From Basidiobolus meristosporus CBS 931.73 (taxonomy: Eukaryota; Fungi; Basidiobolomycota), in assembly GCA_002104905.1 (NCBI GenBank), contig MCFE01000462.1, positions 1 through 64,000 on the forward strand: DNA of 64,000 nt. The letters are read 5' to 3'. Below the pieces are notes generated by a model, which was not told the DNA's origin, searched no databases, and saw nothing but the letters and a program-made list of their open reading frames with translations. Shown here one piece after another: positions 4,609-64,000 of the stretch. How positions within the stretch are numbered: the first letter of the stretch is position 1; the number at the start of each line of letters is the position of its first letter. The translations under genes were made by a program, and so were the position numbers.

Positions 4609-5852
4609 TTACTGATTGGAGTTATAGACCAAGAGGTTAGGAGTGTCACTGTCCAGACCACTGATGACATTCTGGGTGGCGCCAGCTGAGAGTGCATCGT
4701 ACACTGATTGTGGCGAGCTCAGGCTCCCCTGGGAAAGGTAGAGCGCCGCGACTCCTGCAACGTGAGGACTGGCCATACTAGTGCCCGAGATTCGGTTGGT
4801 CGCAGTGGTGCCTCCGATCCATGCCGAAGTGATGTCTTGTCCAGGTGCGGCAATGTTGACACATTGGCCGTAGTTGGTGAAGCTGGCTGCAGTATCTGAG
4901 ATGGTGGTGGCTGCCACGGTGAATGCTCCGGCGGCATTCGCTGGTGAGACATTGCAAGCATCTTGGCTCTCATTTCCTGCCGCCACAATGAAGCTCACTC
5001 CTGCCTGCACGGCAGAGTTAACTGCCGCCTTGAGGGCTTCACTATTCCCTCCACCAAGTGACATATTCGCCACGCTTCTTCTCCCAGAGCTTCTGGCTCT
5101 TTGCGCCACCCAGTTGATCCCAGCAATGATCCCTGAAGTGCTCCCGCTGCCTGCCCCACTCAGTACCTTGACTCCGATCAGGCTCGCCTTCTTTGCCACA
5201 CCATAGGTGCTTCCTCCAACTGTACCAGCAACATGGGTTCCATGTCCGTTCAGGTCATCCACCGCTTCACCGTTGATGAAGCTGACGGGAAGACTCGCTC
5301 TTCCTCCAAAATCAGAGTGTCTCACATTGATACCGGTATCGATGATATACACATCCACTCCGGCTCCGGCGGTGTCAGGGTAGACGTATGGAGCATTGGG
5401 GTTTCTTGACCTCTGCGAGACTCTGGGCAGTCCCCAGCTGGGCGGATTGTTCTGAGTGCCAGAGATGCTGAAGATCTGCTCAGCCTCCACGTACTCAACA
5501 TCCCCTTGGGCCTTGAGGTCGCTCACCAGTGACTCACTGAACACCCCCGCGTAGGCACTGAAGTCCGCAAATGAGAGCTTGCTCTTGATCTCATTCTTCA
5601 GCGTGTTGTTTCCGCTGCGACCGCGGTTGTACTGATCCAGCTTCGTCTTCAACAGTTGATCCACTAGAGAAATGTTAGCCAGGGACATCGACGTCCAGAG
5701 AGAACTTGAGCATTACCTTTGTTGGGGTCGGCAGCATTCTTGAACTTCACCACGTATCTGTTGGCAATTTCTGGAGCCTGCGCATCTAGGACTGGTGCAC
5801 CAAGGACGACAGCGATCAAGGAGAGTAGAGCAACACCACGAATAGCAACCAT
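4609..5852 (-). CDS. Secreted subtilisin-like serine protease (S8A, proteinase K type) with I9 prodomain, 396 aa, 2 exons
   Basis: Signal peptide MVAIRGVALLSLIAVVLG, intron 5664-5716 (GTAATG...CTAG), catalytic triad motifs IDTGI, HGTHVAG and GTSMASPHVAG. Confidence 0.97.
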
Positions 5853-40443: not shown

Positions 40444-43400
40444 TCAGCCACGGTACTTGGATCGGTTCGGTGTCCAGGAGCAGTACTGCTTGAGGGTCGA
40501 TCCGATCTTTTCCTTGGTCACGATCTTGCTCAAGATGTCGTCGAAAAGGCTGGCCTGAGGCACGTTACGCTCATACGCGGTGACCGCTATGATCGGCGTC
40601 TCCTGGTTGAGGTTCTTCGTGGATTTGATCATCCGCGCGGCCGTAAAACCGTCGACTAAAACGTAGGCGAGTTAGAAATCATCGGGGAAGGGCGGGTCGA
40701 ACATGGAATCTAGTTCACTTACTGATCGGCATCTTGATGTCCATGAAGATGATATCGAACTTCACTTTGCCCATGCAGCACCTGATCGCCTCAGCGCCGT
40801 TGTAGCACACCACCGAGCTGCAATGGAGCTTCTCCAGGATCCTCTCTAATAGCTTCGCGCTGATCGCGTTGTCATCCACAATAAGGCACTTCAGCCTGCT
40901 GTGGCTGGGTTTTCTGGATAACGGGCCCAGCCCGCTAGGACTAGATTTGCTGGACGAGGCCCGAGACCTGGGCTGGTTGGTTGACCGCTTTGGCGATTCT
41001 GCAGCATTGTCGGGGAGCGACGATGTTCTTCCGCACCAAGACATCCGGGAGCTTGGGAGGGAGGAGGACATCGTTTGCTCAAATGACTTCAAGGCAGATG
41101 TGCTTAGGGCAGATGGGACGGAGACGTTTCTTGGTCTTGGCGTGGGGATGGCGAGGTTTCGGTCCTCCGAATTGGACCGGATATGGATCATGCTATGCCG
41201 TTTGGTGGAGTCTGTGATGGACGGGTCCGACTTCAGCCTCCTAATCACATCATCATTGGCTTTGGCCAGAACCTCTAGATTCTTGTACGAAAAGTTGCCG
41301 AAGTCTGCCGTGGTAGGCTCGGTTGTGCCGCTGGTAGACTGTGACTCGGGTGTGCCCGCTGTCGCAGGTTGGGTGGTGGGCTGACTGGTGTCTTGTTCCG
41401 TCTCTGCACGGAGCTCAGGATGTTCATCCGCATCAAAGTTGGCCATGGATGCTCCTCTACCATCAAAATAATCGGTGTCCTCAATGCTTTCGGGTTGCGG
41501 AATGAATGCCGGCCGCTCGGTCAACAAGGTGTCCCAGTGTATGCCGGCGAAGAACGGATGGTTCTTGACTTCCTCGATGCCGTTCAGACCCAGTCGTTTC
41601 TCGACGTCGGTGCACATCAGCCTCTCCATAAGGTCACGTGCCTCGGGCGAGACATCAAACTGGTCTTCGTGCCAGTCGATATTGCGAGAGAGAATGTTCT
41701 CAAATACCTTCTCCGGCGTGTCGGCATTGAAAGGTGGAACGCCGTATATAAATTCATACAAGATCACCCCTAATGCCCACTAATAAACAATCTCAATTAA
41801 TAGGACGTTATGCCGTGGTGCACTTTCCATTCTGCTTACCCAGTCTACCATTGCATCTTGCTGCGTGCCCAAGATGCTCTCTGGGGCCAGATAGTCCGGC
41901 GTGCCCACGCACTTCTTGGGGCTTTCCTCCTCCTTGAAGTTCTGGAACGCTTCGTCGGTCAGAAATAGGCTCCCAAGTGGCGTTCCTGGGACGCTGTTTC
42001 CTCCAGGCGTGCTGTCCGAGAAATTACTGGCAACGGAATTTCTCGGGCTATCCAAGAAGTTCGGTACGTTTGGAGTGTGCAATATATTGCTAGGAGAGTC
42101 GGTGCTAGAGAGGTGATCAAGGTACGGAGAAGGTGGCCCAAAAGAGTCGCTCCTTGCTCCGGTGATGTTTACCTTTAGGGAAGTGGACTGGTTGCGCGCC
42201 CGTCTGTTGAGAAATCCTATTCTCGATAACCCAAAGTCGGTAAGTTTGAGGTGGCCGTTCTGGTCGATGAGCAAGTTATCAGGTTTAAGATCACTGGAGC
42301 GTTGTAGGAGGTTAGTAGTGAATAAACCAAGAGTGAAAGTGGCAGCTTCTCTTACCGATGAATAATCCCTTTTCCGTGTAGATACTCTAGGCCCAGAACA
42401 ACCTCTGCCAGGTAATTTCGGGCCCATTCCTCCGGTAGCTCGCCCATCCCTTTGATCAAGGCAGCGCAGTCGCCACCATTCAAATACTCCATGACCAGAT
42501 ACAAATAATCTTTGCTTTGAAACGTAAAGTAGAGCTTCACTACGAACGGCGAGTCAGTCTGCATGATCAGTGCCTTGCGTTCGGCCTTGACGTTCATCAC
42601 CTGATTCTTGGTGATCATATCAGATTTTTTCAACACCTTGATGGCAAAATATTCGCCGGTGGTTCGCTTCTTGGCGAGATACACCGATCCAAACGCCCCT
42701 TTGCTAATCGGCTTGATGATCTCGAAATCTTTGATGCTAATTTGCGCTGAGCGTGGCCCGGGCGTGGCGGGGCTGAGGGTTGGGGAATAAGGTGTGGTGC
42801 CTGACGAGAGATCCTGCCAGAGCCGAGATGACTTTGGTGACCCAAAAGGCGATGCAGAAGTATCTATCTCCTTGAGAGTCAGTCTGGGTCTTCTTAATCT
42901 TACGGAGCCGCGAGTCGGCAGTGCTTCCTTGAACTGCTTTGTAGCAGGCTGATCCAAATTCAACTCCTCGATGTACCTCTCGTCTATCAAACTTCCGCCA
43001 CACTCCAGCTTGATTTTCGCTTCCCACTGAGCTTCTGCTTTTTCCCCTCCTCGAGCTGCGGAAAGCATTTCTTTCGTCGCCTCGAGTTTCTCTCTAACGC
43101 ATGTTTGGACGTTCTGCAACAGATGCTGAATCCCTGGGTCGACAGAAGTAAGCGCCCAGGCGGAGATCTCTTGCCAGTGTGGCAGGCTCTCCAAAGGCTG
43201 ATCATCATGATTATCGGGAATCTTGATCGCCATGGCAAGGTCGAGAATCTGCTTGGCTGAGCAGAGTATATCCAGTATGCTATTGCGCCTGTTGAAGTCG
43301 TCGAGCGATCCAATGATGGTGTTGCAAATTTCACATATCTCAGCCCGGGTTTCCTGAAGAGAGTCGTCGCAGCTCTGGAGTTTCCGCTCGGCTTGGTGGA

Positions 43401-46400
43401 TTTTGGTACAATGCTCGGAGTGGGTTTCGAAGAATAAGGGGGACACCATCTGTTCACAGATATGGCAGAGAACGTGAGGAGGAAGAGGTTGAAGTGGCAT
43501 TGGGGAACCGCTCTGCGACCCACTTTCTGAGCAATTCTCTGAGCCTTTTATCTTACCGTCCCTGAACGACGGAGTTCTCTCCACATTTACTGGTTCCTCA
43601 ACATCGATCGCATCACCATCGTCAAAGTCCTCACCACCGAAGAGGACGGAACTCGAGTCTGCCCAGGTGTCTTCCTCACCCTCATTGATCGGCTGGATAA
43701 CCCAGAGAGTGTGTGAAGGCTCTCCATTCAAGTGGTCAGAATAGCCAAGAATCCCTTTGGCTTCCATCTTCGCCCAATTATGCAATCCCTCAGAGCTCTC
43801 CTCATTCCTCTGCAGTAAAGAGAACCGAACCTCGATCGTCTGTGTGTCGTCATACAATAGTTGCGAAGTTGCGATGGAGAAAATATCCGCATCACTATCT
43901 GGTAGGAATTCGGCTATGGAATGACCAAGAAGCACTTGCGGATCAGATCTAGGAACAGCAAGCACCGTGAGAGATTTGTCAATGCAATGATTCGAGTCGA
44001 AAGGCTTACCCCATTAACTCCCTCCAAGCTGGGCTTAAATAACGCAACCGGACATCCTGGAGAGTCAACTCCATTACGATGCTTACCCCTTGGCCTTCTT
44101 CGACAACCTTCCGTAGCTCATTGATATCCTTCTTGATTTTGTTGGGATCCGAGCGAGACTTTCTAGCTCGTCGGCGTTTTTGCGGCTTCGATTCCTTCGT
44201 GGAGCCGGATTGTGGGCGTACCCTCTCCTCTGTGGCGCCATGCTTCTTGCCGATATGGCGTTCGTGCTGCGAGTACTCCCGCTCCAACTTCTCCGCCTCA
44301 CGAAGCTGAATGCTGATGTTCAAGTAACCCATAAGCGTCAACAATCGAGAGAACATCTCTTTGTGTGGCCAGTCATTCTGGAACCATTGATTTTGGATCT
44401 TGGTCATGGTATTGACATAGCTTTCGATTTTTCCTTTCGACAACCTGGAATGATCAACGTCGAGGATATCCTGGCCGATGGATATAAAGTCCATTGCTTT
44501 TTGCAGGAACGGGGTTGGGCAGAACGAATCCTCAGAGATGGGAATTACAGCTGACCCATGTCGCTCCAATAGGTTGAGTGTTGAACGGTCTACGCTAGAG
44601 TGGCTCGCGGAGCTTGATGGGTGGCGGGGTGCTATCGGTACAAGCTCATCTTAATAAACGCGCAGGTAGCATTGATTGAAAACATACTTACTGCTATTGT
44701 TGTTGTCTGCTGGCTGAAGGTAGGCTTCCACATCGGAGCTTCGTGATTGTGAGGAAGGGTGGCTCTCGTAGTCCATGGAGGTACACTGCGCTGGGGAAGT
44801 AGACATTCGCATGACCAAAGGCTCATTGTTATCAGGATGGATAGAGATGGTTGGGGTTGAAGTGTGGGAGCGGCTTCTGTACATGTTCGTGTCCCTACCA
44901 CCCTCATCTCTATCCTGGCCAAACATGGGCTCGCTCAGGTCATGAATCAGATTCATGGATTGATCGTCCAAGCTACTGTCTGAAATACCGTCGGCATCCT
45001 CCTCCTCCTCAACGTAGTTCAACGTCCCCTCAACAAATTGATTCAGAATCTCAATAAGCTCGCGAATCAATCGGTCACACTCTCGTTTACGATAACGGAT
45101 ATCCTTTTCCAGGCTGCGCTTGCTCAATTCCGAGGAAAGCGTGGGGAGTTTGAACACTTTACCATTCCCAGTGGACGTGGAGCCGGAGTACGAGACTGCA
45201 CGTGACATAGGCACACTCTCTATTGAGGGGTCGAAGGCGGTGTGCCTTGCCGGGGCCGCAGACTTGTCTTTGTCGGCGAAGGTGGAGGCGAGTAGCCGGA
45301 GCTGCAGGTGCTTGGTACGTAAGAATTCCTCGTAAGTTGAAGGAAGATCGAAATTCATGGGGGTCTCCAGAAGTTCATAGCACATATCTACCACCTGGTT
45401 CCACCATAGCAAGTACTCTCGATTCTTTTTAAAAGTGACAAATGGACGATCACGTCCGTCAGCCAACGGAGGATCGTAAATCCAGTTGAACCAATGTGTT
45501 TCCGCCGATGGCTTGTTTCCTGGCCAATTCTTCACTTTGGCGACTCTCGACTGATACAATTTGCACGCATACGTATACACCGATGCTTGGAATAGCGACG
45601 AATTCTTGTGATGATTTTCTCTGGCTCGGGAGCGATCTAGGGCTTCATTCGGAGTGGCGGTCGGTAAAGAAGTCGAGTACGAATACACAGACGAGGGATG
45701 TATCGGCTGCATAGGCAATGCTGTTCCCTGACTAGGACCAGGTCCCGACGGGCTATTCAGGTCTGCGTTGATTGTATGGTCCGCATTCTCTATTCCCAGG
45801 GCGTTCTTCTCTCGTGGTTTCATAGAGCTCTCTGCGATGCTTCGTGCCGGTTGGAAACGATTGAACTTGACATTGCTCACTGAGAGTACCCGACGATGCC
45901 GCGTCTTGGGGATGTCAGATGGTAACATCTTGGCAATAGGAAGTGCCATGCCACCATCATCGGCCAAATTGGTACCAATGAAGGAGGCACGTTTGGATTT
46001 AACCAAAAACTTTCCACTGAGGGAGGGCGAGTTTACCTGGTTTGTTGACTCAATGGCCATGGGAGATGACGGGCCTGTGCTCCATTCTGCAGATGGCCCT
46101 TCCCCGTTGTAGGATGTTGTTCGGCCTTTTCGCCAGGAAAGTGAGTCAAGCTCGCTGGGGCTGATCTCTTGCGGTTTCCGCACATTCTCGGCGAGCTTGT
46201 TGACATTCATAACGGTATCTATTAAAGAGGATCTTCGAGACCTGTACCATCCCTTGCCGTTGGTTAATGGGCTGGCCACTTTGGGAGAAGAGCGATTCGA
46301 CTTGCTCTCATCGTCAAGATAGGTTTCATCCTTGGCAACTAATGAATCTCGAGATGTGAAAGTGGGCTGACTGGGAGTAGCCAATGGTGATCCATACGAT

Positions 46401-52856: not shown

Positions 52857-53214
52857 GACTCGGAAAATGGGGAAAATGGGGAATACTGGTGATGGGAGTG
52901 AAGGGCCCTGATTTTATATGTTCTCCCTTTCATTCTAAGAATCTACTTGAAGGTGGTGAATTGCGCTTGAAAGAGCGCTCAAAGCAATTCGTTGTCAATC
53001 CTCTACCAGTTTCAACAAACTGCTTGTTGACTACAATAGGTGATTCCTAGAATCCATGGCATTTATCACTTGACACCAGTCTGGTTCCAAGATCTACGCA
53101 CAATATGTTTCATCATTTTGGGTTGTTCCGCATCCGTGACGATCAGGTACTCAATGGGAATAAATCCCGTCTACCGGTTGGACTCAGACAGAGCTCCTCT
53201 TACTTCAGGTGAAC

Positions 53215-54417
53215 ATGGTGGTTAACGCAACGATAGGTGCTCTGGTGTCCTCCGTAGGAAGAAACCTGGCTGATTCGCTTACACACAGCGTCAGCCCCAC
53301 CGCGAATGTGCTGTTCTCCCCATTGTCCATATTTGCCGCGCTCTTCATGCTCCTGTTTGGCACTGCCGAGAGAAGCCAGAGCCAGTCAGAGCTTCTACGC
53401 TTCTTCGGCTCCCCGGATACCCACAGCAGCTCGCTCCCTAACCTGGCTGAGTCCTTCCATAACTTCTTCCAGCCGTTGATGGGTGACCACGAGGGTGTCG
53501 GGCCATCCGAGGACCACAACGCCACCTTCCTGCTGGCCAACTCGCTGTGGGGAGAAGCATTCAAGCAAAGCTACGTTGACCTGAACAGGGAGAAACTCTT
53601 TGCCTCTGTATTCTCACAGACTCCCACCGCGACGAAGGTGAATCAATGGGTGGCGAAGAACACCAAGAACCATATCACCGGGATCCTTCCACCAGGATTT
53701 CGTCTGGATCCACAAAGCCTGTTGCTTGTGAACACAGTCTTCTTCCATGGGATGTGGAAGAATGAGTTCAAGGCCAGTCGAACCACCTCGGAGGAGTTCC
53801 AGGTGCTGTCGGGAGCACCGATCAAGGTGAAGATGATGAACTCATTCCGGGAGAGGTGGGCCTATTCGGAGAGCGAGAAGTACCAGGTGCTGGATATGCC
53901 GTACACCGACGACCGGTTCGTGGCAACCGTAGTGCTACCAAGGGAGGTGCAATCCTTCGCCAGTTTCACCCACAGTCTCAGCGAAGAGGATTGGACCGAT
54001 ATTCTGGAAGGAGATAGGTATACACAGAAAGTGAACCTTCACCTACCGAAGTTCGACCTTGAGCAGGAGCTGAATCTCAACCAGGCGCTGCAGAAGGGAG
54101 GGGTCAGAGAGATATTCGGAAGCAGCGCCAGGCTTGACAATCTTTCGAAGTTCCGATGTATGTCAGCGATGTGCTGCACAAGTGTCGCATCGAGGTTAAT
54201 GAAAAAGGTAACGGGAAAGTGAAGCAAGTATATCAGCATCCACTAACCTCTTTTTACAGGCTCCAAAGCGAGCGCAGCAACCGCGGTGGTCATTCAGGTG
54301 CTATCCTCGGCTAGACCAAAGCCAACACCGGAAATGCGATGTAATCGGCCTTTTTTGTTTGTTATTCGAACCAAAACCGGGGTTCCTATGTTCATTGCTT
54401 ACATCGCCAAACCTTGA
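53215..54417 (+). CDS. Serpin, copy 1 (no signal peptide, 2 exons); 1-nt deletion frameshift at about 54146-54153
   Basis: NVLFSPLSIFAAL, VNQWVAKNT, LLLVNTVFFHGMWKNEF, QVLDMPY, LHLPKFDLE. After the frameshift: PMYVSDVLHKCRIEVNEK, intron 54208-54259, then GSKASAATAVVIQVL-SS and CNRPFLFVIR...KP*. Confidence 0.93.
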
Positions 54418-54572
54418 TTCTTTCTGAATAAATCCCTCCGATCCCTCCTTATAACAGACTGAGGGATATTCCAGAATATCTTAACAAGGAATCTCCGATT
54501 TTTTTTTCATTGATCCACTTGCTAAAAGTCATTCAGAAGAGCTTGGAAACCTATTAACTACTCTTGCACACC

Positions 54573-54761
54573 ATGTCCCAACAAGCTCATCCCATGCGCA
54601 TTGAGATCGTCTCAACCAAATCCCTTTCGACACACAGTGCTTCCAAGCGTATGAAGAACTTTCTCGCCGAAAACACAGCGGTCCATTCCCTCCCCAACTC
54701 AGTAGTGTACCAATTGAATGAGATCAATCGTGCCATCAAGAAACCCTCAAAGAAGGAGTAG
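54573..54761 (+). CDS. 62-aa protein, possibly an RNA polymerase I subunit A14 (Rpa14/Ker1)-like protein
   Basis: PMRIEIVSTKSLS...SKRMKNFLAEN...NSVVYQLNEINRAIK follows the recalled A14 pattern (P..I....S..A...L..FI ... S..L.QLKRIQR.L). Similarity is weak. Confidence 0.4.
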   Translation: MSQQAHPMRIEIVSTKSLSTHSASKRMKNFLAENTAVHSLPNSVVYQLNEINRAIKKPSKKE

Positions 54762-55105
54762 CTCAGTGTCCTTAGCATATGTATATATAGCCAGTTAGAC
54801 CAAATAGATTCTGATAGTTGCTTTCCACTGTTACCTGCCTGTTTCACCTGACAATAGAAACTTACATAAATATTCCACTTTCCGCAATTTAGTCATTAGA
54901 ATTATTCCACTCTGCCAATATAATATTCACTGGTGATCGTACCCAATGATTAGCATTTTGGGACCAATTTTTTTCTGGTTTCATTAATCTAAATGACCGG
55001 CTGGACGTGGAAGAATTTTTGAATAAAACCCTAGAGACTTGGGAAATTTGTTTGTACCGAAGGACGGCACTGGAAGCACTATATCCCTTGCCTTAGACTA
55101 TTCCC

Positions 55106-58100
55106 ATGATGCAGTATTTAAGGCAGACGGCCCGACGTTCTCTCGTGAGCAATGTCTACTCTCACCTGGGTAGACGTGGAACAATGATTACCCGGCCTTT
55201 CAGTATACATAGACTTCAACAAGTGCAAAAGAGCTCTACTGTGGATTCAGACAGTCACAAATTACCGCAACCGGCAAACATAAAGCTCAAGAATGATTTC
55301 AAGCTGTCCGTGAACTTCCTGGCCAAATACAAAAACGCCATTCCTCCATTTGGTTTCAATGGTCTTGGCGAGCTTGTTTATCGTAGAACATATTCGCGTT
55401 TAAAGACAAATGGCGAACGGGAGCAATGGTACCGTGGCATGCTTCGGGCTTTCAGGGACGCGCCTCTAACCATTTTGTTGTGCTGAAGGTGGGAGACAGT
55501 CGAGCGAGTGGTCAACGGAACCTACAATATTCAAAAGAAGTGGATTGAGCAGAACGACCTGGGTTGGGATGCTTACAAGGTATGACTCTCAAGTGTGTGG
55601 TCTGTGGGATGCATTTGCTGAAACCGCTATCACTTCACAAGGCCCAAATGTCTGCGCAGCGAATGTACGATCGGATTTTCAATATGAAGTTCCTGCCTCC
55701 TGGCAGAGGTCAGTTTCGAGAGAGCTCTTCAGTTTCCCACAGCCCGTATTGATAGTTTGTTACAGGATTGTGGGCCATGGGATCTCCCTTGACCGAGGAG
55801 CGAGGAATATTCGCTGCTTTAAACAATTGCGCTTTTGTCAGCACGGAGAGTATGTGGGATGGCAGGAATGCCCCCAGTCGTCCATTTACGTTTTTGATGG
55901 ACGCCACCATGCTTGGGTAGGTTATCAAAAGCACAAGCCCCAGGGACAACCACTCATTTCATCACAGTGTAGGAGTCGGCTTCGACACAAAAGGGGCCAC
56001 TATAGCCGAAGAGCGCGGCAAAGTGGTTACCGAGCCCAATGTCTCCAAAGGCTCATTGGTCTACACCATCCCTGATTCCCGTGAAGGTAACGTTGATACG
56101 CTTGGGCACGTCTCAGTAGATTCTAATTCTGCGCAATGAAAGGTTGGGTCAGGTCGGTCGAGCTTCTTATAGACTCCTACTTCGATCCCAAGATGAGTTC
56201 CCCGGTAAGAATATGGTGATTTTCCGATAGCTCCCGTTCGTGCAACTCAACATCTGTCTTCTCAGGAGTTCAACTACGATCAAATCCGACCAGCCGGACT
56301 CCCAATCAAAGTAAGTTCCTACAACCCTCCTCGGCCCTCACGCAGGTGATTTACTATTCCAACAACCGCAGGGATTTGGTGGCGTCTCTTCTGGACCAGG
56401 CCCATTGAAAGACCTTCACGATCATATTCGCGCGACTCTGAACAAAAACGTCGGGGCTCCGTTGACCGTGACTTCCATCGTGGACTTGATGAACCTGATA
56501 GGGAAATGCATCGTGAGCGGCAACGTTAGAAGAACAGCAGAGATTGCTTTCGGCGACCCGATGGATGACGAATACATCGATCTGAAGAACTACGAAGTGA
56601 ATCCGCACCGTAGCGAGTACGGCTGGACTAGCAACAATTCCGTAAGCGAGCATAGCCAAGCGTTCGTTGCTGCGTTGAGCTAACCCGTCGTGATGTAGGT
56701 CTTTGCTCAGCTTGGAATGGACTACACGAAGGTGTGCAGCCGTGTGATCAAGAATGGAGAGCCAGGATTTGCGTGGCTGGAGAATGCTCGGAGCTATGGC
56801 CGAATGAGCGAGCCTATGGTACAGCACCTACTTCGATAGAGAACAAATTCACAGCTTTGCTGACTTTATGCGTAGAACATGAAGGATGCTCGCGCTATGG
56901 GAGGAAACCCTTGCCTGGAGCAGACGTTGGAGTCCTTCGAATTGTGCTGCTTGGTCGAGGTGTTTCCATCCAACCACAATTCTCTAGAGGATTTCTTGGA
57001 AACGCTGGAGTCGGCATTTCTGTATGCAAAGACAGTCACCCTAGGCAACACCCATTGGAAGGAAAGCAATCAGGTTATGCTCCGAAACCGACGCATCGGC
57101 ACAGGGCTCAGCGGGATCGCTCAGTTCATCAGCAAGAGAGGTATTGTTTGTGGATCTTGTGGATGCATGGGGCAGTCGGAATAACCATATATGGTGTGCA
57201 GGCTTACATGAGTTCAAAAACTGGTGCGAGGAGGGATACAAGGCTGTGCAGCAAATCGACAAACAGTAAGTTCCAAGCCCCGCTGACTCCATCGCCCCAG
57301 GCTAATCGATCTCTCAGGGTTTCCGAGTGGTTCTGCATCCCACGCTCCATCAAAACCACCACAGTGAAGCCAAGTGGCACCGTCTCTCTGTTGGCCGGCG
57401 GTTAGTCCAGACGTTAGTTGGAATGATGTGACAGGCGACTAAACCAGATTCGTTGTGTAGCCACGCCTGGTATGCACTACCCTGAAAGCCGGTATTGCAT
57501 TCGTCGTGTGAGGATAGCCAAGGGCTCGGAGATGATCAGTGCTCTGAATAAGGCCGGGTACAAGATCGAGCAGGATGTTGGTATGTGGATGTGGGAACCT
57601 TCTTTGTCCAGCAGTTACCGACCTAACATGGATGTAGTTGAGCCGAACTCTGTTGTGGTGGAGATCCCGATCGACCACGGGGACGGGCTTCGCGGTCTGA
57701 AGGAGGTCAGCATGTGGGAGCAGCTGAGCCTGGCCGCTTTCATGCAGAAGTACTGGTCCGATAACCAGGTCAGCTGCACCGTAACCCTCGACCCCACCCT
57801 CGAGGGACCCCATCTGAAGCACGCATTGGATTATTTCCAATACCAACTCAAAGGTACGTTTTCTTCTGGGCCACCGAACCTCCGCCGCTCTAACCCCGAG
57901 TGTAGGTGTCTCCTTCCTGCCGCGTCTGCCCCTGGGCGCCTATCCTCAGATGCCATATGAGGCCATAGATGAGGAGACTTACTATGAACTGACTTCGCGC
58001 ATCTCCAACCCCACCCCACACTCCCCCAAGCCTCCACGCACCCACCAGAAGCTCTTGAAGCGCCTCGTGGCTGACGGTGGGGTTCAAATACCCAAGCCCG

Positions 58101-58213
58101 ACTTCCGGCACGTCAAAGAGGAGGCCACGGACCCCGAGATGGAGCGCTACTGCGACTCCAGTAGCTGTGTTATCGAATCAAGCCCACGCATCACCTCCAA
58201 GCCGGAACAATAG
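55106..58213 (+). CDS. nrdJ: Class II (adenosylcobalamin-dependent) ribonucleotide reductase, monomeric RTPR type, 15 exons
   Basis: PPFGFNGLGELVYRRTYSR, FLPPGRGLWAMG, ALNNCAF, MLGVGVGFDTKG, GNVRRTAEI, GWTSNNS, NGEPG, GGNPCLEQTLESFELCCLVE, NRRIGTGLSG, TVKPSGTVSLLAG, YWSDNQVSCTV, C-terminal YCDSSSC. Fourteen GT-AG introns all phase in frame. Confidence 0.95.
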
Positions 58214-58392
58214 CCCCGTTATATCTGATATCTCGTTGTACCAATAGAAGTGATTTCAAGTATCTCAATAAAGCCAACTGCCCCGCCACGCTCACAACGG
58301 TCCGAATGGTGTGTAGATGATTATATTGTACGGTTTATTACTACTCAAAGATATACACTCTGTTTCATGATACATACGATGCTGGTTATGCT

Positions 58393-60945
58393 TTACTTTC
58401 TAAGATCTTTCACTCTGACGGCGACTGCGTTTCGGTGGGCCTCTAAGCCTTCGATTTCGGCCAATCTCATGACCGAGTCGGCAAGACGGTCCAGGCCATC
58501 ACTGGTCAGCTGTTGGCTGGTGATGTACTTCAGGAAAGTGTCGGTGTTGACGCCCGAATACATTCTGGAGTATCCGTATGTGGGAAGAGTGTGGTTTGTT
58601 CCGGAGGCGTAATCACCACAGCTCTCTGGTGACCATGGGCCGACGAAGACGGAGCCAGCATTGTCGACCTGGTCGACGTACTTCTCGGCCTCCTCAAGGT
58701 GAAGAATAAGATGCTCAGGTGCGTAATCGTTGGAGAAGCTCATGGCCTCCTCCATGGTGTTCACATGGAGGGCATAGCTCTTGGGGATGGACTGGCGGAC
58801 GATGTCCACTCTGGGCAATCTGCTGGCTTGGCTATGGACCTCATCCTCAATCGCCTTGAACTTCTCTTCAGTGAGGTTCACCGCGACCAGCACAACCTGA
58901 CTGTCAACTCCATGCTCCGCTTGGGACAGCAGATCGGAGGCGACATAGCTGGGTGTGCATGTGGAATCAGCGATCACCAAGAGCTCAGATGGCCCGGCGG
59001 GCATATCGATGGATGTCATTGCTGAGCTGTCGTTCTGAACAATCATCTTGGCCGCGGTGACGTATTGGTTGCCAGGTCCACAGATCTTGTCAACCTTGGG
59101 GACTGATTCGGTACCGTAGGCCATAGCAGCGACTGCCTGAGCTCCACCAGCACAGACCACCATGGATGCACCAACCTTGTCAGCAACGTACAATACCTCG
59201 GGTACGACGGTGCCATCCTTTCTAGGAGGACTGGCGATAACGATCTCCTTGCACCCGGCGACCTTGGCTGGGATGCCTAACATGAGAGTGGTGGAGGGCA
59301 ACACAGCGGTGCCACCGGGAACGTACAAGCCCACCCGTTCAATGGGTCTGCTGAATCGGGAGCAGGTGACTCCGGGCATGGTCTCCACCACCAGGGTGCT
59401 ACGATCGTATTGCGCATCGTGGAATTTGTAGATGTTCTCGTAAGCTTGGTCGATGGCTGCCTTGGTTTGCTCGTCGATCTGCATCAACTCCTTGGGGAAT
59501 GGCGCTTTGACAACAGGGTTGCTCAACTTGACTCCATCGAACTTCTCGGTGAAGTGGAGGATGCCTTGGTCGCCCTTGGCCCGGACCTCTTGCAAGATGG
59601 GCTGGACGCGAGCGATGATCTCCTCGGATTTGATGATGGGTCTGAGCAACAAAGACTTGCGTGTTTCTTCGTCGATTTCCGCGTTGGAGTGGACCCGCAT
59701 CTGAATTCTGTCCCCGGGTTGTGGGGCTGCGGGGCTGGAGGCTGCTTCCTCTGACTTCTTGGTCTCGGGCTCGGCCTTCTTCACCTCGTATTGGGGCTTG
59801 GCGTTTCCGGGTCTTCTGGTGATCTTCTTGGATCTCTTGTTCAGATGTCTTTCTACGTCGGACAAGGTGACTCCGTTGGCCACGCACTTGGTAAGTGCGA
59901 AGTAGATCAGATCAGCAGCCTCCCAGGCGATCTCCTCGCGGTCGGTGGCGTCGCACAATTCGTGGGCCTCCTCGATGATCTTGGAGTGCAGGAGGTTGGA
60001 CTCATTGAAAAGGCGCGCGGTGTACGAGCCTTGAGGAGCGGACTCCTTGCGTTGGGTCAAGGTGGAGTACAACGCGGTGATGCCGTCGTCTACGCCGAAG
60101 CAGGTGCGGGTGTTCAGGTGGCAGAATCCGGATCCGTTTTGACGGACGGTGAAGCGTAAGGCGTCGCGATCGCAGTCGGTATCGATCTTCACCAACTCCT
60201 GGGTTGCTCCAGAGCTGGCTCCCTTGTACCAGAGGCCACGCTTTCTCGACTGGTAGACACCGGTGCCAGTCTTGATGGATTCGTTAAGACTCTCGACTGA
60301 GGAGTATACCAAACCCAGGCACACGCCTTGTTCGTCGACCACAATGGTGGTGAATAGACCATCCGGGCGATCGGATACCAGGGTGGCGCTCAGGGCCTTT
60401 CCAACCTTGTCCGAGTCGAAGGTGAGTTGGCTGACTGGGACGCTGACGTCCATGTTTTTGGCGCTCAACTTTTCGAGCACTGCTTGGACTGGCTCCACAC
60501 CGTCAACCACGATGCGTACCGCACCGCCATCGCGTAACAGAGTAGCCTCGGTCGAGAGCGACTCCAGGGCAGCGAGGGCTTGCTCAGTTGGGTTCTCTAG
60601 CTCCAGTACGATGACTGATACTTGGCTGGCATACTTCTCTACCCTAGCCACCAGATCGGTGGCCTCGTTGACAGATAATACGACGCCAAGTCGGCTTTGA
60701 GGGAACTCGAATAGCTCGGGAACAAGGCTCGCCTCCTCGAACAGGACTTTGGACGCACCAGCATCTAGAAGCTTCAAGGTAGCCTCCACAACATCGTCTA
60801 TTCCGTCCAGCTTCACCCAGCTGGCACCTTCGGGCAAAGCGGAGTCTGCTGACTTCACGCCGGTCAGGTACTTCTCGGGGAAGACCGAGAGACGGGAGTA
60901 GGTCTCAGAGTTGATGTCTGAGGAGATATATTTGGGTATCAACAT
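58393..60945 (-). CDS. HIS4: Trifunctional histidine biosynthesis protein (PR-AMP cyclohydrolase / PR-ATP pyrophosphohydrolase / histidinol dehydrogenase), 850 aa, intronless
   Basis: YQSRKRGLWYKGASSGATQEL, DCDRDAL, SYTARLF, KIIEEAHEL, GLYVPGGTAVLPST, ICGPGNQYV, IDMPAGPSE, SQAEHG, YAPEHL, GDYASGTNHTLPT. Confidence 0.98.
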   Translation of the reverse strand: MLIPKYISSDINSETYSRLSVFPEKYLTGVKSADSALPEGASWVKLDGIDDVVEATLKLLDAGASKVLFEEASLVPELFEFPQSRLGVVLSVNEATDLVARVEKYASQVSVIVLELENPTEQALAALESLSTEATLLRDGGAVRIVVDGVEPVQAVLEKLSAKNMDVSVPVSQLTFDSDKVGKALSATLVSDRPDGLFTTIVVDEQGVCLGLVYSSVESLNESIKTGTGVYQSRKRGLWYKGASSGATQELVKIDTDCDRDALRFTVRQNGSGFCHLNTRTCFGVDDGITALYSTLTQRKESAPQGSYTARLFNESNLLHSKIIEEAHELCDATDREEIAWEAADLIYFALTKCVANGVTLSDVERHLNKRSKKITRRPGNAKPQYEVKKAEPETKKSEEAASSPAAPQPGDRIQMRVHSNAEIDEETRKSLLLRPIIKSEEIIARVQPILQEVRAKGDQGILHFTEKFDGVKLSNPVVKAPFPKELMQIDEQTKAAIDQAYENIYKFHDAQYDRSTLVVETMPGVTCSRFSRPIERVGLYVPGGTAVLPSTTLMLGIPAKVAGCKEIVIASPPRKDGTVVPEVLYVADKVGASMVVCAGGAQAVAAMAYGTESVPKVDKICGPGNQYVTAAKMIVQNDSSAMTSIDMPAGPSELLVIADSTCTPSYVASDLLSQAEHGVDSQVVLVAVNLTEEKFKAIEDEVHSQASRLPRVDIVRQSIPKSYALHVNTMEEAMSFSNDYAPEHLILHLEEAEKYVDQVDNAGSVFVGPWSPESCGDYASGTNHTLPTYGYSRMYSGVNTDTFLKYITSQQLTSDGLDRLADSVMRLAEIEGLEAHRNAVAVRVKDLRK

Positions 60946-61452
60946 TCTCTACAGAGAAGTGGGTAGTCGGAGGGAAGGGAGTTGGGTGTAGTCAGGGATG
61001 AAGGCGGCTGAAGAGCTTCGAAAAAATCGATGGATCTTGTGTTCACTTGAAAATATATATCCCGCATTCATTCGTCTCATTCGCACCCATTCGCACCCAT
61101 TCGCACTCCTGGCTGATATCTCCTCAATATGGATCCTTCGAAATTTGATAAGATTCATGGTCAAGGTGGACCGTATTGGGGAATGTTTCGTTGGTGCTAC
61201 TGCCTAATCAGGCTTGGGGATGAGTTGGGATGAGCAATCATGAGACACCCCCGATTCGGGACATCTCGGGGTATTCCATACAGATCTCATTGGGCTCAAC
61301 TCCATTCGACTACCACATCCCGATCCAGGGAATTTCTACCGGGAAACAAGGTTTGCTTTCGTGCACATCCTGGTTGGCGTGCCATGGTGAATGAACTCCA
61401 ATTGCTGCTTAGATCACAGTTTATTCGTAGAGATTGATTAAATATTGTACAT

Positions 61453-62817
61453 CTAATTAGTGGTTTGCTTGCGGAATTTGCCTCGCGATTGCTTGAAGGG
61501 TTGCCTGCGGCCCTCCTGCTGGGAAGCTGGGTGGTTCCCCGGTTTTCTTTTCTTGAATGGTTGGCCGGCGTGGGGCTCGTTGGGATTCCGAGGGCGCTTC
61601 TGAAATTTCTTGCCTGGTGCTTTGTGGCCAAAGGCTTTTTTGGGGTTGGCTCCGGTCTGCGATTCCTGGCCTTGCTCCTGGTCCTTGTTCTGGTCCTCAT
61701 CCTCATCCTGGCCCTGTTCCTGCTCCTTCTTCAGTTGCTCCTCACGGAGTTTCTTCTTCTCCTTGCGCTCGATGAACTTAGCGTCGAAGCGCTCTCCGTC
61801 AAGGATACGCAGCGTGGGTATCATCTTCAAGATCTAGTAACATACCACGAGATTACTTCTATGCTATCAAACCCTCCTGGGAGCACGGACCACTCACCTT
61901 CTCGCGATACCCATCCTTGCTGCACAGCGAATTGCCCTTGAGGTTGAGGTTTGTAAGATGCAGGAGAGAGCCGAGAATAGTAACATCGCTGTGAACGCAG
62001 GACGTTAGTTATGCGGGGATTAGTAGAATCCGATAGAGGCGGCCGTACCTCCACTCCTTGATAAGGTTGCTCCCCAAGTCCAAAATGGTCAACGAGCTGC
62101 AGCCGCGTAGCGATTCGGGGATGGCGGTGATTTTGTTATCGTTCAGACGAAGCTCCTTCAGCTCCGGATTCAGGGAGAAATCCGGCACCGAACGGAGTTC
62201 GTTATGGGCCGCCGAGAATTTGGTCAGTTTCGCCAGGGTGGGGAAGCTTGGCAACTCCTCCAACTTGTTGTGCGACAAAACTAGCGACATAAGGTTGGTC
62301 AGCTCTGGGGGGGGTGGGGTTCGTTCTTGTGGTGATGAAGGGTACCTATGGTGTTCAATTCGTGCAGTCCTCCGATGTTCTCCACACGTTTGATGGAGTT
62401 GTGGTTTAGAATCAACGCTTTCAAGGATACCAAGCTGGTAACGTGTTGTGAGATGCGATTGATCTTGTTGTGACTGAGATTAAGCACTAGCAAAAAAAAC
62501 GCTTGAGTCCCTCAGAACCAAAAAAACCTCCCCTCCACTGCCCACTTACCCGAAAGCTTCTTCAGTCTCTCCAAACCCTCGAAACTCTCCAACTGATTCC
62601 CGGAGAGATTCAGCCAGGTAAGCTCCGAATTGTACTGGATTCCGGAGAGGGCGTTCGCCGCTTTGATGGTGTTTTGGGAGAGGTTCAGCTTTCTTAAACC
62701 GACGCAACACGAGATATCCTCGATGTGGTTGACCTCCTTCTTGGAGAAATCCAATACCTGAACCTCGGGGAGTGGTGTGTTCACTACGTCCGAAATGACC
62801 AGAGGAGTTAACTTCAT
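61453..62817 (-). CDS. Leucine-rich repeat protein (SDS22-like repeats, LRRcap) with a K/Q-rich basic tail, 5 exons
   Basis: Repeated LxxLxLxxNxI units (LRKLNLSQNTI, LTWLNLSGNQL, LKELRLNDNKI), cap GYREK|ILKMIPTLRILDG, basic tail, stop at 61453. Confidence 0.8.
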
Positions 62818-62941
62818 GGTTGCGATACGTCTAGATTACGCCAACGGTGATGGTAACGTGGTTGTAACGATTGTGACATCCACCTTTTGATCCCAAAAAA
62901 AAAAAGAAATATTCCGTTTTTTGCTGTCCCTCATCCCTCCC

Positions 62942-62950
62942 GTCACGTGA
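62942..62950. promoter_or_regulatory. E-box (GTCACGTGA) in the divergent promoter between the LRR gene and serpin copy 2
   Basis: Matches the Cbf1/USF consensus; function inferred only. Confidence 0.3.
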
Positions 62951-63112
62951 TGTCCGGGCGCGAATCATCACAATGTTAGAAGCTTTCATATTGATCAGGC
63001 CAGCTGAAATTCGGCCGTTTCAGAGCAAGATATATCATTCTAAACATGTGTTTCATTCCCCCGGGTATTAAAAGAGACCCAGCGAGCCAAGCCCCCCTTG
63101 CATCCGGCGAAC

Positions 63113-64000
63113 ATGGTGGTTAACGCAACGATAGGTGCTCTGGTGTCCTCCGTAGGAAGAAACCTGGCTGATTCGCTTACACACGGCGTCAGCCCCACCG
63201 CGAATGTGCTGTTCTCCCCGTTGTCCATATTTGCCGCGCTCTTCATGCTCCTGTTTGGCACTGCCGAGAGAAGCCAGAGCCAGTCAGAGCTTCTAAGCTT
63301 CTTCGGCTCCCCGGATACCCACAGCAGCTCGCTCCCTAACCTGGCTGAGTCCTTCCATAACTTCTTCCAGCCGTTGATGGGTGACCACGAGGGTGTCGGG
63401 CCATCCGAGGACCACAACGCCACCTTCCTGCTGGCCAACTCGCTGTGGGGAGAAGCATTCAAGCAAAGCTACGTTGACCTGAACAGGGAGAAACTCTTTG
63501 CCTCTGTATTCTCACAGACTCCCACCGCGACGAAGGTGAATCAATGGGTGGCGAAGAACACTAAGAACCATATCACTGGGATCCTTCCACCAGGATTTCG
63601 TCTGGATCCACAAAGCCTGTTGCTTGTGAACACAGTCTTCTTCCATGGGATGTGGAAGAATGAGTTCAAGGCCAGTCGAACCACCTCGGAGGAGTTCCAG
63701 GTGCTGTCGGGAGCACCGATCAAGGTGAAGATGATGAACTCATTCCGGGAGAGGTGGGCCTATTCGGAGAGCGAGAAGTACCAGGTGCTGGATATGCCGT
63801 ACACCGACGACCGGTTCGTGGCAACCGTAGTGCTACCAAGGGAGGTGCAATCCTTCGCCAGTTTCATCCACGGTCTCAGCGAGGAGGATTGGGCCGATAT
63901 TCTCAATGGGAACAGATACAAACAGCAGGTGAACCTCCACCTACCGAAGTTCGACCTTGAGCAGGAGCTGAATCTCAACCAGGCGCTGCAGAAGGGAGGG
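63113..64000 (+). CDS. Serpin, copy 2 (5' part; runs off the window end)
   Basis: Open frame from ATG 63113 to the window edge, near-identical to copy 1. Confidence 0.93.
   Translation, partial: MVVNATIGALVSSVGRNLADSLTHGVSPTANVLFSPLSIFAALFMLLFGTAERSQSQSELLSFFGSPDTHSSSLPNLAESFHNFFQPLMGDHEGVGPSEDHNATFLLANSLWGEAFKQSYVDLNREKLFASVFSQTPTATKVNQWVAKNTKNHITGILPPGFRLDPQSLLLVNTVFFHGMWKNEFKASRTTSEEFQVLSGAPIKVKMMNSFRERWAYSESEKYQVLDMPYTDDRFVATVVLPREVQSFASFIHGLSEEDWADILNGNRYKQQVNLHLPKFDLEQELNLNQALQKGG

What the first reader, a model, noticed from the sequence alone, without database searches (positions are those of the whole stretch)
53215..64000. A pair of serpins with an inhibitory Leu-Ser reactive loop in a fungus
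Serpins are rare and patchy in fungi. The copy 1 hinge EKGSKASAATA fits the inhibitory consensus, and counting from P17 Glu gives P1-P1' = Leu-Ser, which suits chymotrypsin-, elastase- or subtilisin-like targets. There is no signal peptide. The two copies lie 9.9 kb apart, homology starts essentially at the ATG, and the four genes between them are not duplicated. Possible roles are protection against host or gut proteases, as for serpins of gut bacteria, or control of the fungus's own proteinase-K-type enzymes such as the one at 4609-5852. The role and any HGT origin are inference.
Basis: partly seen in the sequence, partly recalled or inferred. Interest (0 to 1): 0.75.

Follow-up and report, generated by a model that had tools for sequence, protein, structure and literature searches.

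The report
Paired Basidiobolus serpins, one frameshifted

Summary
The window is Basidiobolus meristosporus CBS 931.73, scaffold MCFE01000462. Two serpin genes lie 9,898 bp apart, and their similarity starts 4 nt before the ATG.

Copy 2 (63113 to 64326, which runs past the window end) is intact and encodes 385 aa. Copy 1 (53215-54417) is one base shorter than copy 2 at about 54146/7. As assembled, its hinge and reactive loop are therefore out of frame. This is either a very recent pseudogene or an assembly error.

The pair and its flanking genes are also present in B. ranarum, so the duplication is old. Gene conversion keeps about 970 nt of the gene body nearly identical within each species. 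The intron and the reactive-loop exon escape conversion.

By the canonical count, Leu-Ser holds for copy 1 only. Copy 2 reads ...IMLR-S-A. Across the family, 8 of 11 members have Arg or Lys at the 16th residue from the hinge Glu, so copy 1's hydrophobic loop is the derived form.

There is no signal peptide and the hinge fits the inhibitory consensus. The AlphaFold model of copy 2 (pLDDT 89) is a native serpin fold. No close donor was found: the nearest outside relative is an amoebozoan transcript at 38% identity.

A 2022 in-silico survey already lists eight I04 serpins in this genome, including copy 1 and, by my inference from accession numbering, copy 2.

Verdict: new member of a known kind, moderate interest.

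The parts
53215..54146 (+). Serpin copy 1 (ORX89266 locus), exon 1 up to the frame change. Covers helix A through strand s6A region.
   Evidence: Pfam Serpin E 9e-57 over residues 14-311. PDB serpins match down to E 2.5e-28. Identical core to JGI model P0001.
54140..54150 (+). Site where copy 1 is one base shorter than copy 2. The reading frame changes here.
   Evidence: Alignment A2 shows a single gap inside a 145-nt tract that is otherwise 100% identical. Frame A ends in a non-serpin tail and a stop at 54222. Frame B has a stop at 54135-54137 and is open from 54138 (my reading of the sequence).
54147..54207 (+). Rest of copy 1 exon 1 in the shifted frame. Encodes ...YVSDVLHKCRIEVNEK, that is strand s5A and the start of the hinge (P17 Glu, P16 Lys).
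   Evidence: Reading of the sequence compared with copy 2 and the B. ranarum orthologues.
54208..54259 (+). 52-nt GT-AG intron with a CTAAC branch site, phase 1, inside the P15 Gly codon.
   Evidence: The intron sits at the same position in copy 2 and in both B. ranarum genes, where splicing reproduces the deposited proteins exactly. The intron sequences themselves are unrelated.
54260..54417 (+). Copy 1 exon 2. Covers the rest of the hinge, the reactive loop (...ATAVVIQVL/SSARPKP...), strands s1C, s4B and s5B, and the stop.
   Evidence: Translation. Pfam Serpin positions 323-370, E 1e-6. Against copy 2, the 29 codons after the loop show 20 synonymous and 5 non-synonymous differences.
53211..53968 (+). 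Gene-conversion tract 1. 99.3% identical to copy 2, with 5 substitutions in 758 nt.
   Evidence: The same codons are only about 67% identical between species, although the two loci are syntenic orthologues.
54040..54184 (+). Gene-conversion tract 2. No substitutions against copy 2 and one single-base length difference. It is preceded by a divergent patch (53969-54039, 77% identity) and followed by diverged sequence.
54573..54761 (+). Conserved 62-aa gene downstream of copy 1. It is not part of the serpin, but the JGI model P0001 splices serpin exon 1 onto it.
   Evidence: P0001 ends in this ORF's sequence. B. ranarum has a separately called, near-identical 62-aa gene at the same place.
55184..58213 (+). 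Intervening gene: class II ribonucleotide reductase-like, 741 aa. Not duplicated.
   Evidence: Called gene with PF17975 and PF21995. Also next to the locus-1 serpin in B. ranarum.
58393..60945 (-). Intervening gene: trifunctional histidine biosynthesis protein (HIS4-type), 850 aa.
   Evidence: ORF. PF01502, PF01503 and PF00815. Syntenic in B. ranarum.
61453..61824 (-). Intervening gene: 123-aa Lys/Glu-rich protein with no Pfam match.
61859..62817 (-). Intervening gene: leucine-rich-repeat protein, 256 aa.
   Evidence: Syntenic in B. ranarum.
63113..64000 (+). Serpin copy 2 (P0005, 385 aa), first 296 codons. The gene continues beyond the window: exon 1 to 64106, intron 64107-64162, exon 2 to 64326. 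It is intact.
   Evidence: Pfam Serpin E 1e-77 over residues 16-383. AlphaFold2 model pLDDT 89.

Best explanation
The locus holds two old paralogues from a Basidiobolus-restricted family of cytosolic, inhibitory-type serpins.

Shown:
- Both copies are full serpin genes without a signal peptide.
- Each has one intron, placed exactly at the hinge. Exon 2 is therefore a self-contained reactive-loop cassette.
- The pair and its flanking genes are conserved in B. ranarum.
- Within each species the two gene bodies are much more alike than orthologues are between species. This is concerted evolution by gene conversion. Conversion stops about 20 nt before the intron, so the loop exons have diverged.
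- Copy 2 keeps the family's usual basic residue (...IMLR-S-A...). Copy 1 has a derived hydrophobic loop (...IQVL-S-S...).
- Copy 1 as assembled carries a one-base length change 60 nt upstream of the hinge.

Inferred:
- The intact protein works as a suicide-substrate inhibitor. A target protease cleaves the exposed loop, the loop inserts into sheet A, and the enzyme is trapped.
- It acts inside the cell on the fungus's own proteases. Arg/Lys-specific enzymes such as metacaspases are the likely targets for copy 2. Chymotrypsin- or subtilisin-like enzymes are the likely targets for the copy 1 type.
- Copy 1's frame change is either very recent or an assembly artefact. I put these at roughly even odds.
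For: - Identity: P0001 is ORX89266 of B. meristosporus CBS 931.73, and its locus has the same coordinates as the window.
- Serpin domain.
- Fold: AlphaFold2 pLDDT 89 and pTM 0.89, with only the loop (337-349) of low confidence. Foldseek matches native serpins at TM about 0.8.
- Hinge: E-K-G-S-K-A-S-A-A-T-A fits the P17 Glu, P15 Gly, P14 Ser/Thr, P12-P9 small-residue rule.
- No N-terminal extension: the query aligns from residue 23-28 to residue 19-23 of serpin B3/B4 and leukocyte elastase inhibitor.
- Synteny: P0003 lies between the BCDHK-type kinase and RNR-II, and P0002 lies after HIS4 and the LRR gene.
- Concerted evolution: codons 1-326 are 97.5-100% identical between c1 and c2 and 87% between r3 and r2, but 67% between species. 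The two B. ranarum copies pair in the tree.
- Constraint on copy 1: 20 synonymous against 5 non-synonymous differences after the loop. Splice sites and the exon 2 frame are intact.
- Frame change.
- Loop table.
- Family clade supported 100/100.
Against: - No expression, protein or inhibition data exist for any Basidiobolus serpin.
- The P1 register is uncertain. The canonical count puts Ser, not Arg, at P1 of copy 2.
- The cytosolic location rests only on the missing N-terminal extension. No signal-peptide predictor was available, and some clade-B serpins are secreted without a cleaved signal.
- Other fungal serpins (Conidiobolus, Gonapodya, Neocallimastigomycota, Metarhizium/Trichophyton) could not be fetched. 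'Basidiobolus-restricted' therefore means only that none of them appeared among the top hits of three searches.
- Whether the frame change is real cannot be decided from one assembly.
Confidence: 0.8

Rival explanations
1. Both copies are intact inhibitors with a Leu-Ser reactive centre. They were possibly acquired by HGT, and they protect the fungus against host or gut chymotrypsin/elastase or control the nearby proteinase-K-type enzyme.
For: - Copy 1's loop does read Leu-Ser by the canonical count.
- Basidiobolus is a gut-associated fungus.
- An S8 subtilase lies in the window.
Against: - Copy 1 is out of frame as assembled.
- Copy 2's loop is different.
- There is no secretion signal.
- No donor is closer than about 33% identity among bacteria or animals. 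The genes have an intron and conserved synteny.
- The subtilase is 48 kb away and is one of 63 reported in the genome.
Confidence: 0.1
2. Copy 1 is a genuine pseudogene, so the locus has only one working serpin. Copy 1's unusual loop reflects relaxed constraint rather than a new specificity.
For: - The one-base length change truncates the protein before s5A and the hinge.
- The loop of copy 1 and that of its syntenic orthologue P0003 are unrelated: 51% nt identity and dN 0.62 over 21 codons.
Against: - It is the only lesion.
- It lies inside a tract with no substitutions against copy 2, so it postdates the last conversion event.
- The post-loop codons show 20 synonymous against 5 non-synonymous changes.
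- The splice signals, hinge and stop are all intact.
- From my recollection, which I did not check, this is a long-read assembly in which single-base indel errors occur.
Confidence: 0.45
3. The serpins are non-inhibitory fold members, such as chaperone, storage or carrier proteins like ovalbumin, HSP47 or maspin.
For: - No biochemical data exist.
- One paralogue, P0025, has a non-canonical hinge (...EIIERGMATN) and a truncated model.
Against: - Copy 1, copy 2, both B. ranarum orthologues and five further relatives keep the inhibitory hinge consensus exactly.
- The loop is exposed in the model.
Confidence: 0.08
4. The family entered Basidiobolus by eukaryote-to-eukaryote transfer, for instance to or from amoebae, rather than by vertical descent from an early eukaryotic serpin.
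For: - A Dermamoeba algensis transcript (P0014, 38% identity, same hinge HKCR-EVDE-GSKASAATA) nests inside the Basidiobolus family with 98/93 support.
- No other named fungus appears among the top hits.
Against: - The amoeba sequence comes from a transcriptome and could be a fungal contaminant or prey.
- The backbone of the serpin tree is unresolved.
- Other fungal serpins were not sampled.
Confidence: 0.25

Closest known systems
Intracellular (clade B, ov-serpin-like) inhibitory serpins, e.g. serpin B3/B4, B6 and leukocyte elastase inhibitor
   Same: - No signal peptide and no N- or C-terminal extensions, about 380 aa.
- Inhibitory hinge.
- Among the best PDB sequence matches.
- A presumed cytoprotective role against the cell's own proteases.
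   Different: - Only 24-29% identical.
- Does not group with the vertebrate B6-like sequence in the tree.
- The basic residue sits one position closer to the hinge than Arg-P1 of the B6-like serpin.
Plant 'LR' serpins (AtSerpin1), which inhibit metacaspase 9 and the papain-like protease RD21
   Same: - Cytosolic serpin of a non-animal eukaryote.
- A Leu-Arg pair in the loop of copy 2 (...IMLR...).
- AtSerpin1's fold is among the structural matches (3le2).
- The host genome has metacaspases (C14 = 5).
- AtSerpin1's activity on metacaspase 9 and RD21 is summarised in PMC3534287.
   Different: - In AtSerpin1, Arg is the 17th residue from the hinge Glu (my recollection of its sequence). Here it is the 16th.
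- No phylogenetic link was shown.
- The target is untested.
Celpin, the cellulosomal serpin of Piromyces sp. E2 (Neocallimastigomycota)
   Same: A serpin in an early-diverging, gut-associated fungus. It belongs to the only fungal serpin group with a published functional proposal (PMC8778642, citing Steenbakkers 2008).
   Different: Celpins are secreted and carry a CBM_10/dockerin module. The Basidiobolus genes have the serpin domain only and no signal. Celpin sequences did not appear among the top hits.
Serpin paralogue clusters with a conserved scaffold and hypervariable reactive loops (rodent Serpina1/Serpina3; SERPINA tandem arrays, PMC12646145), and insect serpins with alternative loop exons (Manduca serpin-1)
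   Same: The body of the gene is kept alike while the loop diverges. The intron at the hinge makes the loop a separate exon, as in the insect cassette genes (the insect case is from my own knowledge).
   Different: There are two separate genes 9.9 kb apart with unrelated promoters, not tandem arrays or alternative splicing. No extra loop exon was found by tblastn. Positive selection could not be shown because dS is saturated.
Metarhizium brunneum serpin ('mycoserpin', PMC13236867, 2026)
   Same: A fungal single-domain serpin of about 365 aa. That paper studied it with a gene knockout.
   Different: It comes from an ascomycete lineage and is reported as similar to Drosophila Spn42Dd. It was not among the relatives found here, and its relationship was not tested.

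Membership tests
Serpin superfamily (Pfam PF00079, MEROPS I04) | Full-length match to the serpin domain profile | tested here: met
   Copy 2 (P0005): 262 bits, profile positions 8-370 of 370. Copy 1 in pieces: 193 bits (positions 6-299) and 28.8 bits (positions 323-370).
Serpin superfamily (Pfam PF00079, MEROPS I04) | Serpin three-dimensional fold with an exposed reactive loop | tested here: met
   AlphaFold2 model of P0005: pLDDT 89, pTM 0.89, with only residues 337-349 below 50. Foldseek top hits are native serpins at TM 0.77-0.85. This is a prediction only.
Inhibitory serpins | Hinge consensus: P17 Glu, P15 Gly, P14 Thr/Ser, P12-P9 small residues (Ala/Gly/Ser) | tested here: met
   E-K-G-S-K-A-S-A-A-T-A in both copies and in both B. 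ranarum orthologues.
Inhibitory serpins | 17 residues from P17 Glu to the scissile P1 | tested here: inconclusive
   The canonical count gives Leu for copy 1 and Ser for copy 2. The residue conserved across the family is Arg/Lys at position 16, in 8 of 11 members. PMC3534287 notes that some serpins have 16. The cleavage site needs to be mapped.
Inhibitory serpins | Uninterrupted coding sequence from the start through the loop to strand s5B | tested here: not met
   Not met for copy 1 as assembled, which has a one-base length change at about 54146/7. Met for copy 2, where the spliced CDS equals the deposited 385-aa protein.
Inhibitory serpins | Forms an SDS-stable covalent complex with a target protease | not testable with these tools
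   This is a biochemical assay.
Clade B / ov-serpins | Groups phylogenetically with animal clade B serpins | tested here: not met
   The Basidiobolus family forms its own 100/100 clade, apart from the Bufo serpin B6-like sequence. The likeness is in architecture only.
Celpins (cellulosomal fungal serpins) | Signal peptide plus a CBM_10/dockerin module | tested here: not met
   Pfam finds the Serpin domain only, starting at residue 14-16.
Recently horizontally acquired gene | A close relative in a donor lineage, no introns, no conserved synteny among relatives | tested here: not met
   - The best bacterial and animal hits are 25-33% identical.
- A phase-1 intron is conserved in four genes.
- Synteny is conserved with B. 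ranarum.
- GC of 0.50-0.52 lies within the window's range.

The most novel reading that the evidence does not exclude
The Basidiobolus serpins, together with an amoebozoan and a few unnamed environmental sequences, would form a previously undescribed clade of cytosolic serpins of microbial eukaryotes. Their reactive loop would be one residue shorter than canonical, as I recall for CrmA (not checked), with P1 = Arg/Lys at position 16. Their ancestral job would be cross-class inhibition of Arg/Lys-specific metacaspases, that is, a cell-death brake in a fungus. The locus-1 copy would have been retargeted to hydrophobic-P1 proteases, while gene conversion kept its scaffold identical to that of its neighbour.
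Probability: 0.15. Interest if true: 0.65.

Novelty: new member of a known kind. Interest (0 to 1): 0.38.

Why it matters
Fungal serpins are few and almost unstudied. Basidiobolus is an occasional human pathogen and a gut associate of amphibians and reptiles, and it is reported to hold eight of them.

This locus gives a clean natural experiment. Two neighbouring genes have scaffolds that are homogenised and reactive loops that are free to diverge. One lineage keeps an Arg-type loop conserved across species, and the other lineage changes its loop completely.

If the Arg sits at P1 in a shortened loop, the family could be a fungal counterpart of the plant serpin-metacaspase pairing. That idea can be tested directly with recombinant proteins.

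On the practical side, the report corrects two public gene models. ORX89266 is a chimera of a frameshifted serpin and a downstream 62-aa gene. K493DRAFT_333861 is a serpin fused to a membrane protein.

Tried and rejected
- **Extra loop exons.** I looked for alternative, mutually exclusive loop exons near either copy by running tblastn with exon-2 peptides against the window and L001. None was found.
- **Positive selection on the loop.** Nei-Gojobori counts give dN/dS of 0.27-0.34 with saturated dS, so no claim is possible.
- **Independent evidence on the frame change.** The 90% cluster of copy 1 holds only the two NCBI models and no transcript-derived sequence. The question stays open.
- **Identity of the nearest environmental relatives.** P0077 and P0086 sit on short unnamed metagenome or SRA contigs of 1.4-1.7 kb with no informative neighbours.
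- **Profile A4.** It included a bacterial-type sequence (P0057), which pulled in mostly bacterial hits. I repeated the search without it.
- **Other fungal serpins.** Conidiobolus, Gonapodya, Neocallimastigomycota and Metarhizium sequences could not be fetched with these tools, so fungal monophyly was not tested.
- **Loop-length paper.** A search for the CrmA loop-length paper found nothing in the held library. That point rests on PMC3534287 and on my own recollection.
- **Joined copy-1 model.** The spliced, read-through model of copy 1 was not sent to any search or folding tool. Its pieces were searched by reference. It was joined only inside a local codon alignment, with N at the break.
Full report
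**Origin of the window**

The protein search with copy 1 exon 1 returned hypothetical protein K493DRAFT_410538 (ORX89266.1) of Basidiobolus meristosporus CBS 931.73 with an identical core. The encoding contig, MCFE01000462.1 of GCA_002104905.1, has the same coordinates as the window.

**The observation**

- A direct repeat with start-to-start spacing of 9,898 bp joins 53192-53491 to 63090-63389.
- A full alignment shows that similarity starts at 53211, 4 nt before the ATG at 53215 (copy 2 ATG at 63113). The 300 nt upstream are unrelated.
- Both copies match Pfam Serpin strongly (E 9e-57 and 4e-52 for the parts inside the window). They also match solved serpin structures (E down to 2.5e-28).

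**Copy 1 is interrupted**

- The long ORF 53209-54222 ends in a non-serpin tail (...KFRCMSAMCCTSVASRLMKK).
- The serpin sequence (...YVSDVLHKCRIEVNEK) continues in another frame, which is open only from 54138.
- Fetching the rest of the scaffold (L001; window coordinate = L001 + 43104) showed that copy 2 is intact. Exon 1 runs 63113-64106, a 56-nt intron runs 64107-64162, and exon 2 runs to 64326. The spliced product equals the deposited 385-aa protein P0005.
- Aligned with copy 2, copy 1 is exactly one base shorter at about 54146/7. The site lies inside a 145-nt tract (54040-54184) with no substitutions at all.
- The rest of copy 1 is in order. It has a 52-nt GT-AG intron with a CTAAC branch site (54208-54259), which splits the P15 Gly codon. 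Exon 2 (54260-54417) is open and matches the C-terminal end of the Pfam profile.
- The JGI model avoids the problem by splicing from about 54014 onto a downstream ORF. That ORF (54573-54761) is a separate 62-aa gene, conserved almost residue for residue in B. ranarum. ORX89266 is therefore a chimeric model.

**The two loops differ**

| Gene | Sequence from the hinge Glu |
|---|---|
| Copy 1 | EKGSKASAATAVVIQVL/SSARPKP |
| Copy 2 | EKGSKASAATAVIMLRS/APMVVPP |

In copy 2 it is Ser-Ala, with Arg at P2.
- Across the family, the 16th residue is Arg or Lys in 8 of 11 members, followed by Ser, Ala or Cys. These members are copy 2, B. ranarum P0002 and P0157, B. meristosporus P0158 and P0279, the Dermamoeba sequence, and two environmental sequences.
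- The exceptions are copy 1 (Val, Leu), its B. ranarum counterpart P0003 (Tyr, Ala) and P0007 (Ala, Phe).
- A vertebrate serpin B6-like sequence in the same alignment has its Arg at position 17.
- PMC3534287 warns that the canonical assignment is tentative because some serpins have 16 residues.
- The conserved basic residue is therefore a strong candidate for the true P1 in a loop one residue shorter than usual. This is an inference, not a result.
- In either register, copy 1 carries the derived, hydrophobic loop.

**Age of the pair and concerted evolution**

- In B. ranarum (GCA_040143965.1), P0003 lies between a BCDHK-type kinase gene and the class II RNR gene. That is copy 1's position. P0002 lies after HIS4 and the LRR gene, which is copy 2's position. 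The duplication therefore predates the split of the two species.
- Identity over codons 1-326:

| Comparison | Identity |
|---|---|
| The two B. meristosporus copies | 97.5-100% |
| The two B. ranarum copies | about 87% |
| Between species | about 67% |

- The two B. ranarum proteins also pair with each other in the tree. This is the signature of gene conversion.
- In B. meristosporus the pattern is a mosaic:

| Region | Identity to copy 2 |
|---|---|
| 53211-53968 | 99.3% |
| 53969-54039 | 77% |
| 54040-54184 | 100% |
| From 54185 onward | 50-70% |

- The diverged final region covers the end of exon 1, the intron, the loop and the C-terminal strands.
- All four genes share the intron position, but their intron sequences are unrelated.
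- After the loop, copy 1 and copy 2 differ by 20 synonymous and only 5 non-synonymous changes over 29 codons. Both have been under purifying selection for most of their history.
- The single lesion lies inside a tract without substitutions. The frame change is therefore either very recent or an assembly error. I put the odds near even. My recollection that this is a long-read assembly was not checked.

**What kind of serpin**

- The domain starts at residue 14-16, and the proteins are 383-386 aa long.
- PDB alignments start at the same residue numbers as in intracellular serpins B3/B4 and leukocyte elastase inhibitor.
- The AlphaFold2 model of copy 2 (pLDDT 89, pTM 0.89) makes residues 2-22 helix A. 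It leaves only the loop (337-349) at low confidence.
- Foldseek returns native serpins at TM about 0.8.
- The hinge fits the inhibitory consensus.
- These are therefore predicted cytosolic, inhibitory serpins. Pfam finds no dockerin/CBM_10 module, so they are not celpins.

**Family and origin**

- An exhaustive profile search found 38,635 serpins. After the B. ranarum pair (847 bits) the score drops sharply to B. meristosporus paralogues and generic serpins (below about 300 bits).
- Named members found here:
  - B. meristosporus: copy 1, copy 2, P0007 (ORY04632), P0279, P0158 (a serpin fused to a membrane protein, probably a merged model) and P0025 (ORX88876, a truncated model with a non-canonical hinge).
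  - B. ranarum: P0002, P0003 and P0157.
- In a careful maximum-likelihood tree of 40 sequences, these form a 100/100 clade. Inside it, with 98/93 support, sits a transcript attributed to the amoebozoan Dermamoeba algensis. It is 38% identical and has the same hinge.
- The next sequences out are unnamed environmental ones and a Symbiodinium serpin. The backbone is unresolved.
- Bacterial and animal serpins are 25-33% identical. No other named fungus appeared among the top hits.
- There is thus no sign of recent transfer from gut bacteria or a vertebrate host. An older eukaryote-to-eukaryote transfer, or contamination of the amoeba transcriptome, cannot be excluded.

**What was already known**

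- Orłowska et al. 2022 (PMC8778642) state that I04 serpins occur mostly in Neocallimastigomycota and Entomophthoromycotina.
- Their Table S1 gives 8 for B. meristosporus, 1 for Conidiobolus coronatus, 2 for Gonapodya and 12-13 for anaerobic gut fungi.
- Their Table S3 lists ORX89266, ORX89271, ORY04632 and ORX88876 under I04. ORX89271 is copy 2 by my inference from the accession numbering.
- The serpin superfamily phylogeny left fungal serpins as unclassified orphans (PMC8233489).
- A 2026 paper studied a Metarhizium serpin with a gene knockout (PMC13236867).
- The presence of these genes is therefore known. Their anatomy, the conversion pattern, the loop divergence and the frame change are not described in what I could read.
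My analysis agrees with that note and tests it.

**Mechanism (inferred)**

- Copy 2 and its orthologue most likely act as cytosolic suicide-substrate inhibitors of Arg/Lys-specific proteases.
- Metacaspases are attractive targets. They cleave after Arg/Lys and are cytosolic. The genome is reported to hold five C14 genes. A plant cytosolic serpin inhibits metacaspase 9 (PMC3534287).
- The locus-1 lineage has switched to hydrophobic or aromatic residues. That would suit chymotrypsin-like or subtilisin-like enzymes, such as vacuolar subtilases leaking into the cytosol. The genome is reported to hold 63 S8 genes.
- The S8 gene at 4609-5852 is real, but nothing ties it to the serpins.

**Limits**

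- There are no expression or biochemical data.
- No signal-peptide predictor was available.
- Other fungal serpins were not available for the tree.
- Searches with copy 1 were done on its pieces by reference (53215-54150, 54138-54206, 54262-54414). The joined model was not searched or folded. It was used only in a local codon alignment with N at the break.

Noticed in passing
window 55184-58213 (+): A class II (adenosylcobalamin-type) ribonucleotide reductase-like gene of 741 aa (PF17975 RNR_Alpha, PF21995 RNR-II_ins_dom) lies next to serpin copy 1. It is conserved at the same place in B. ranarum. This RNR class is unusual for a fungus and is a possible transfer candidate.
   Followed up: no
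window 54573-54761 (+): A 62-aa ORF is conserved almost residue for residue in B. ranarum (L002 11506-11694). It has only a sub-threshold Pfam hit to ApbA. The public model ORX89266 splices serpin exon 1 onto it, so that model is a chimera.
   Followed up: partly
protein P0014 (EukProt, Dermamoeba algensis transcriptome): A serpin attributed to an amoebozoan nests inside the Basidiobolus serpin family (98/93 support) and shares the hinge HKCR-EVDE-GSKASAATA. The explanation could be transfer, a fungal contaminant in the transcriptome, or old paralogy.
   Followed up: partly
protein P0158 (K493DRAFT_333861, another scaffold of the same genome): This 725-aa model has serpin residues 1 to about 366 fused to a multi-pass membrane protein after the reactive loop. 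Its B. ranarum orthologue P0157 is a plain 400-aa serpin, so the fusion is probably a merged gene model.
   Followed up: partly
It lies 48 kb from the serpins and nothing links it to them.
   Followed up: partly
L001 1-3106 (window about 43105-46210, -): A very large gene (1,818 aa product) combines protein kinase domains with a response-regulator receiver domain. It is conserved upstream of the locus in B. ranarum, where the product is 2,306 aa.
   Followed up: no
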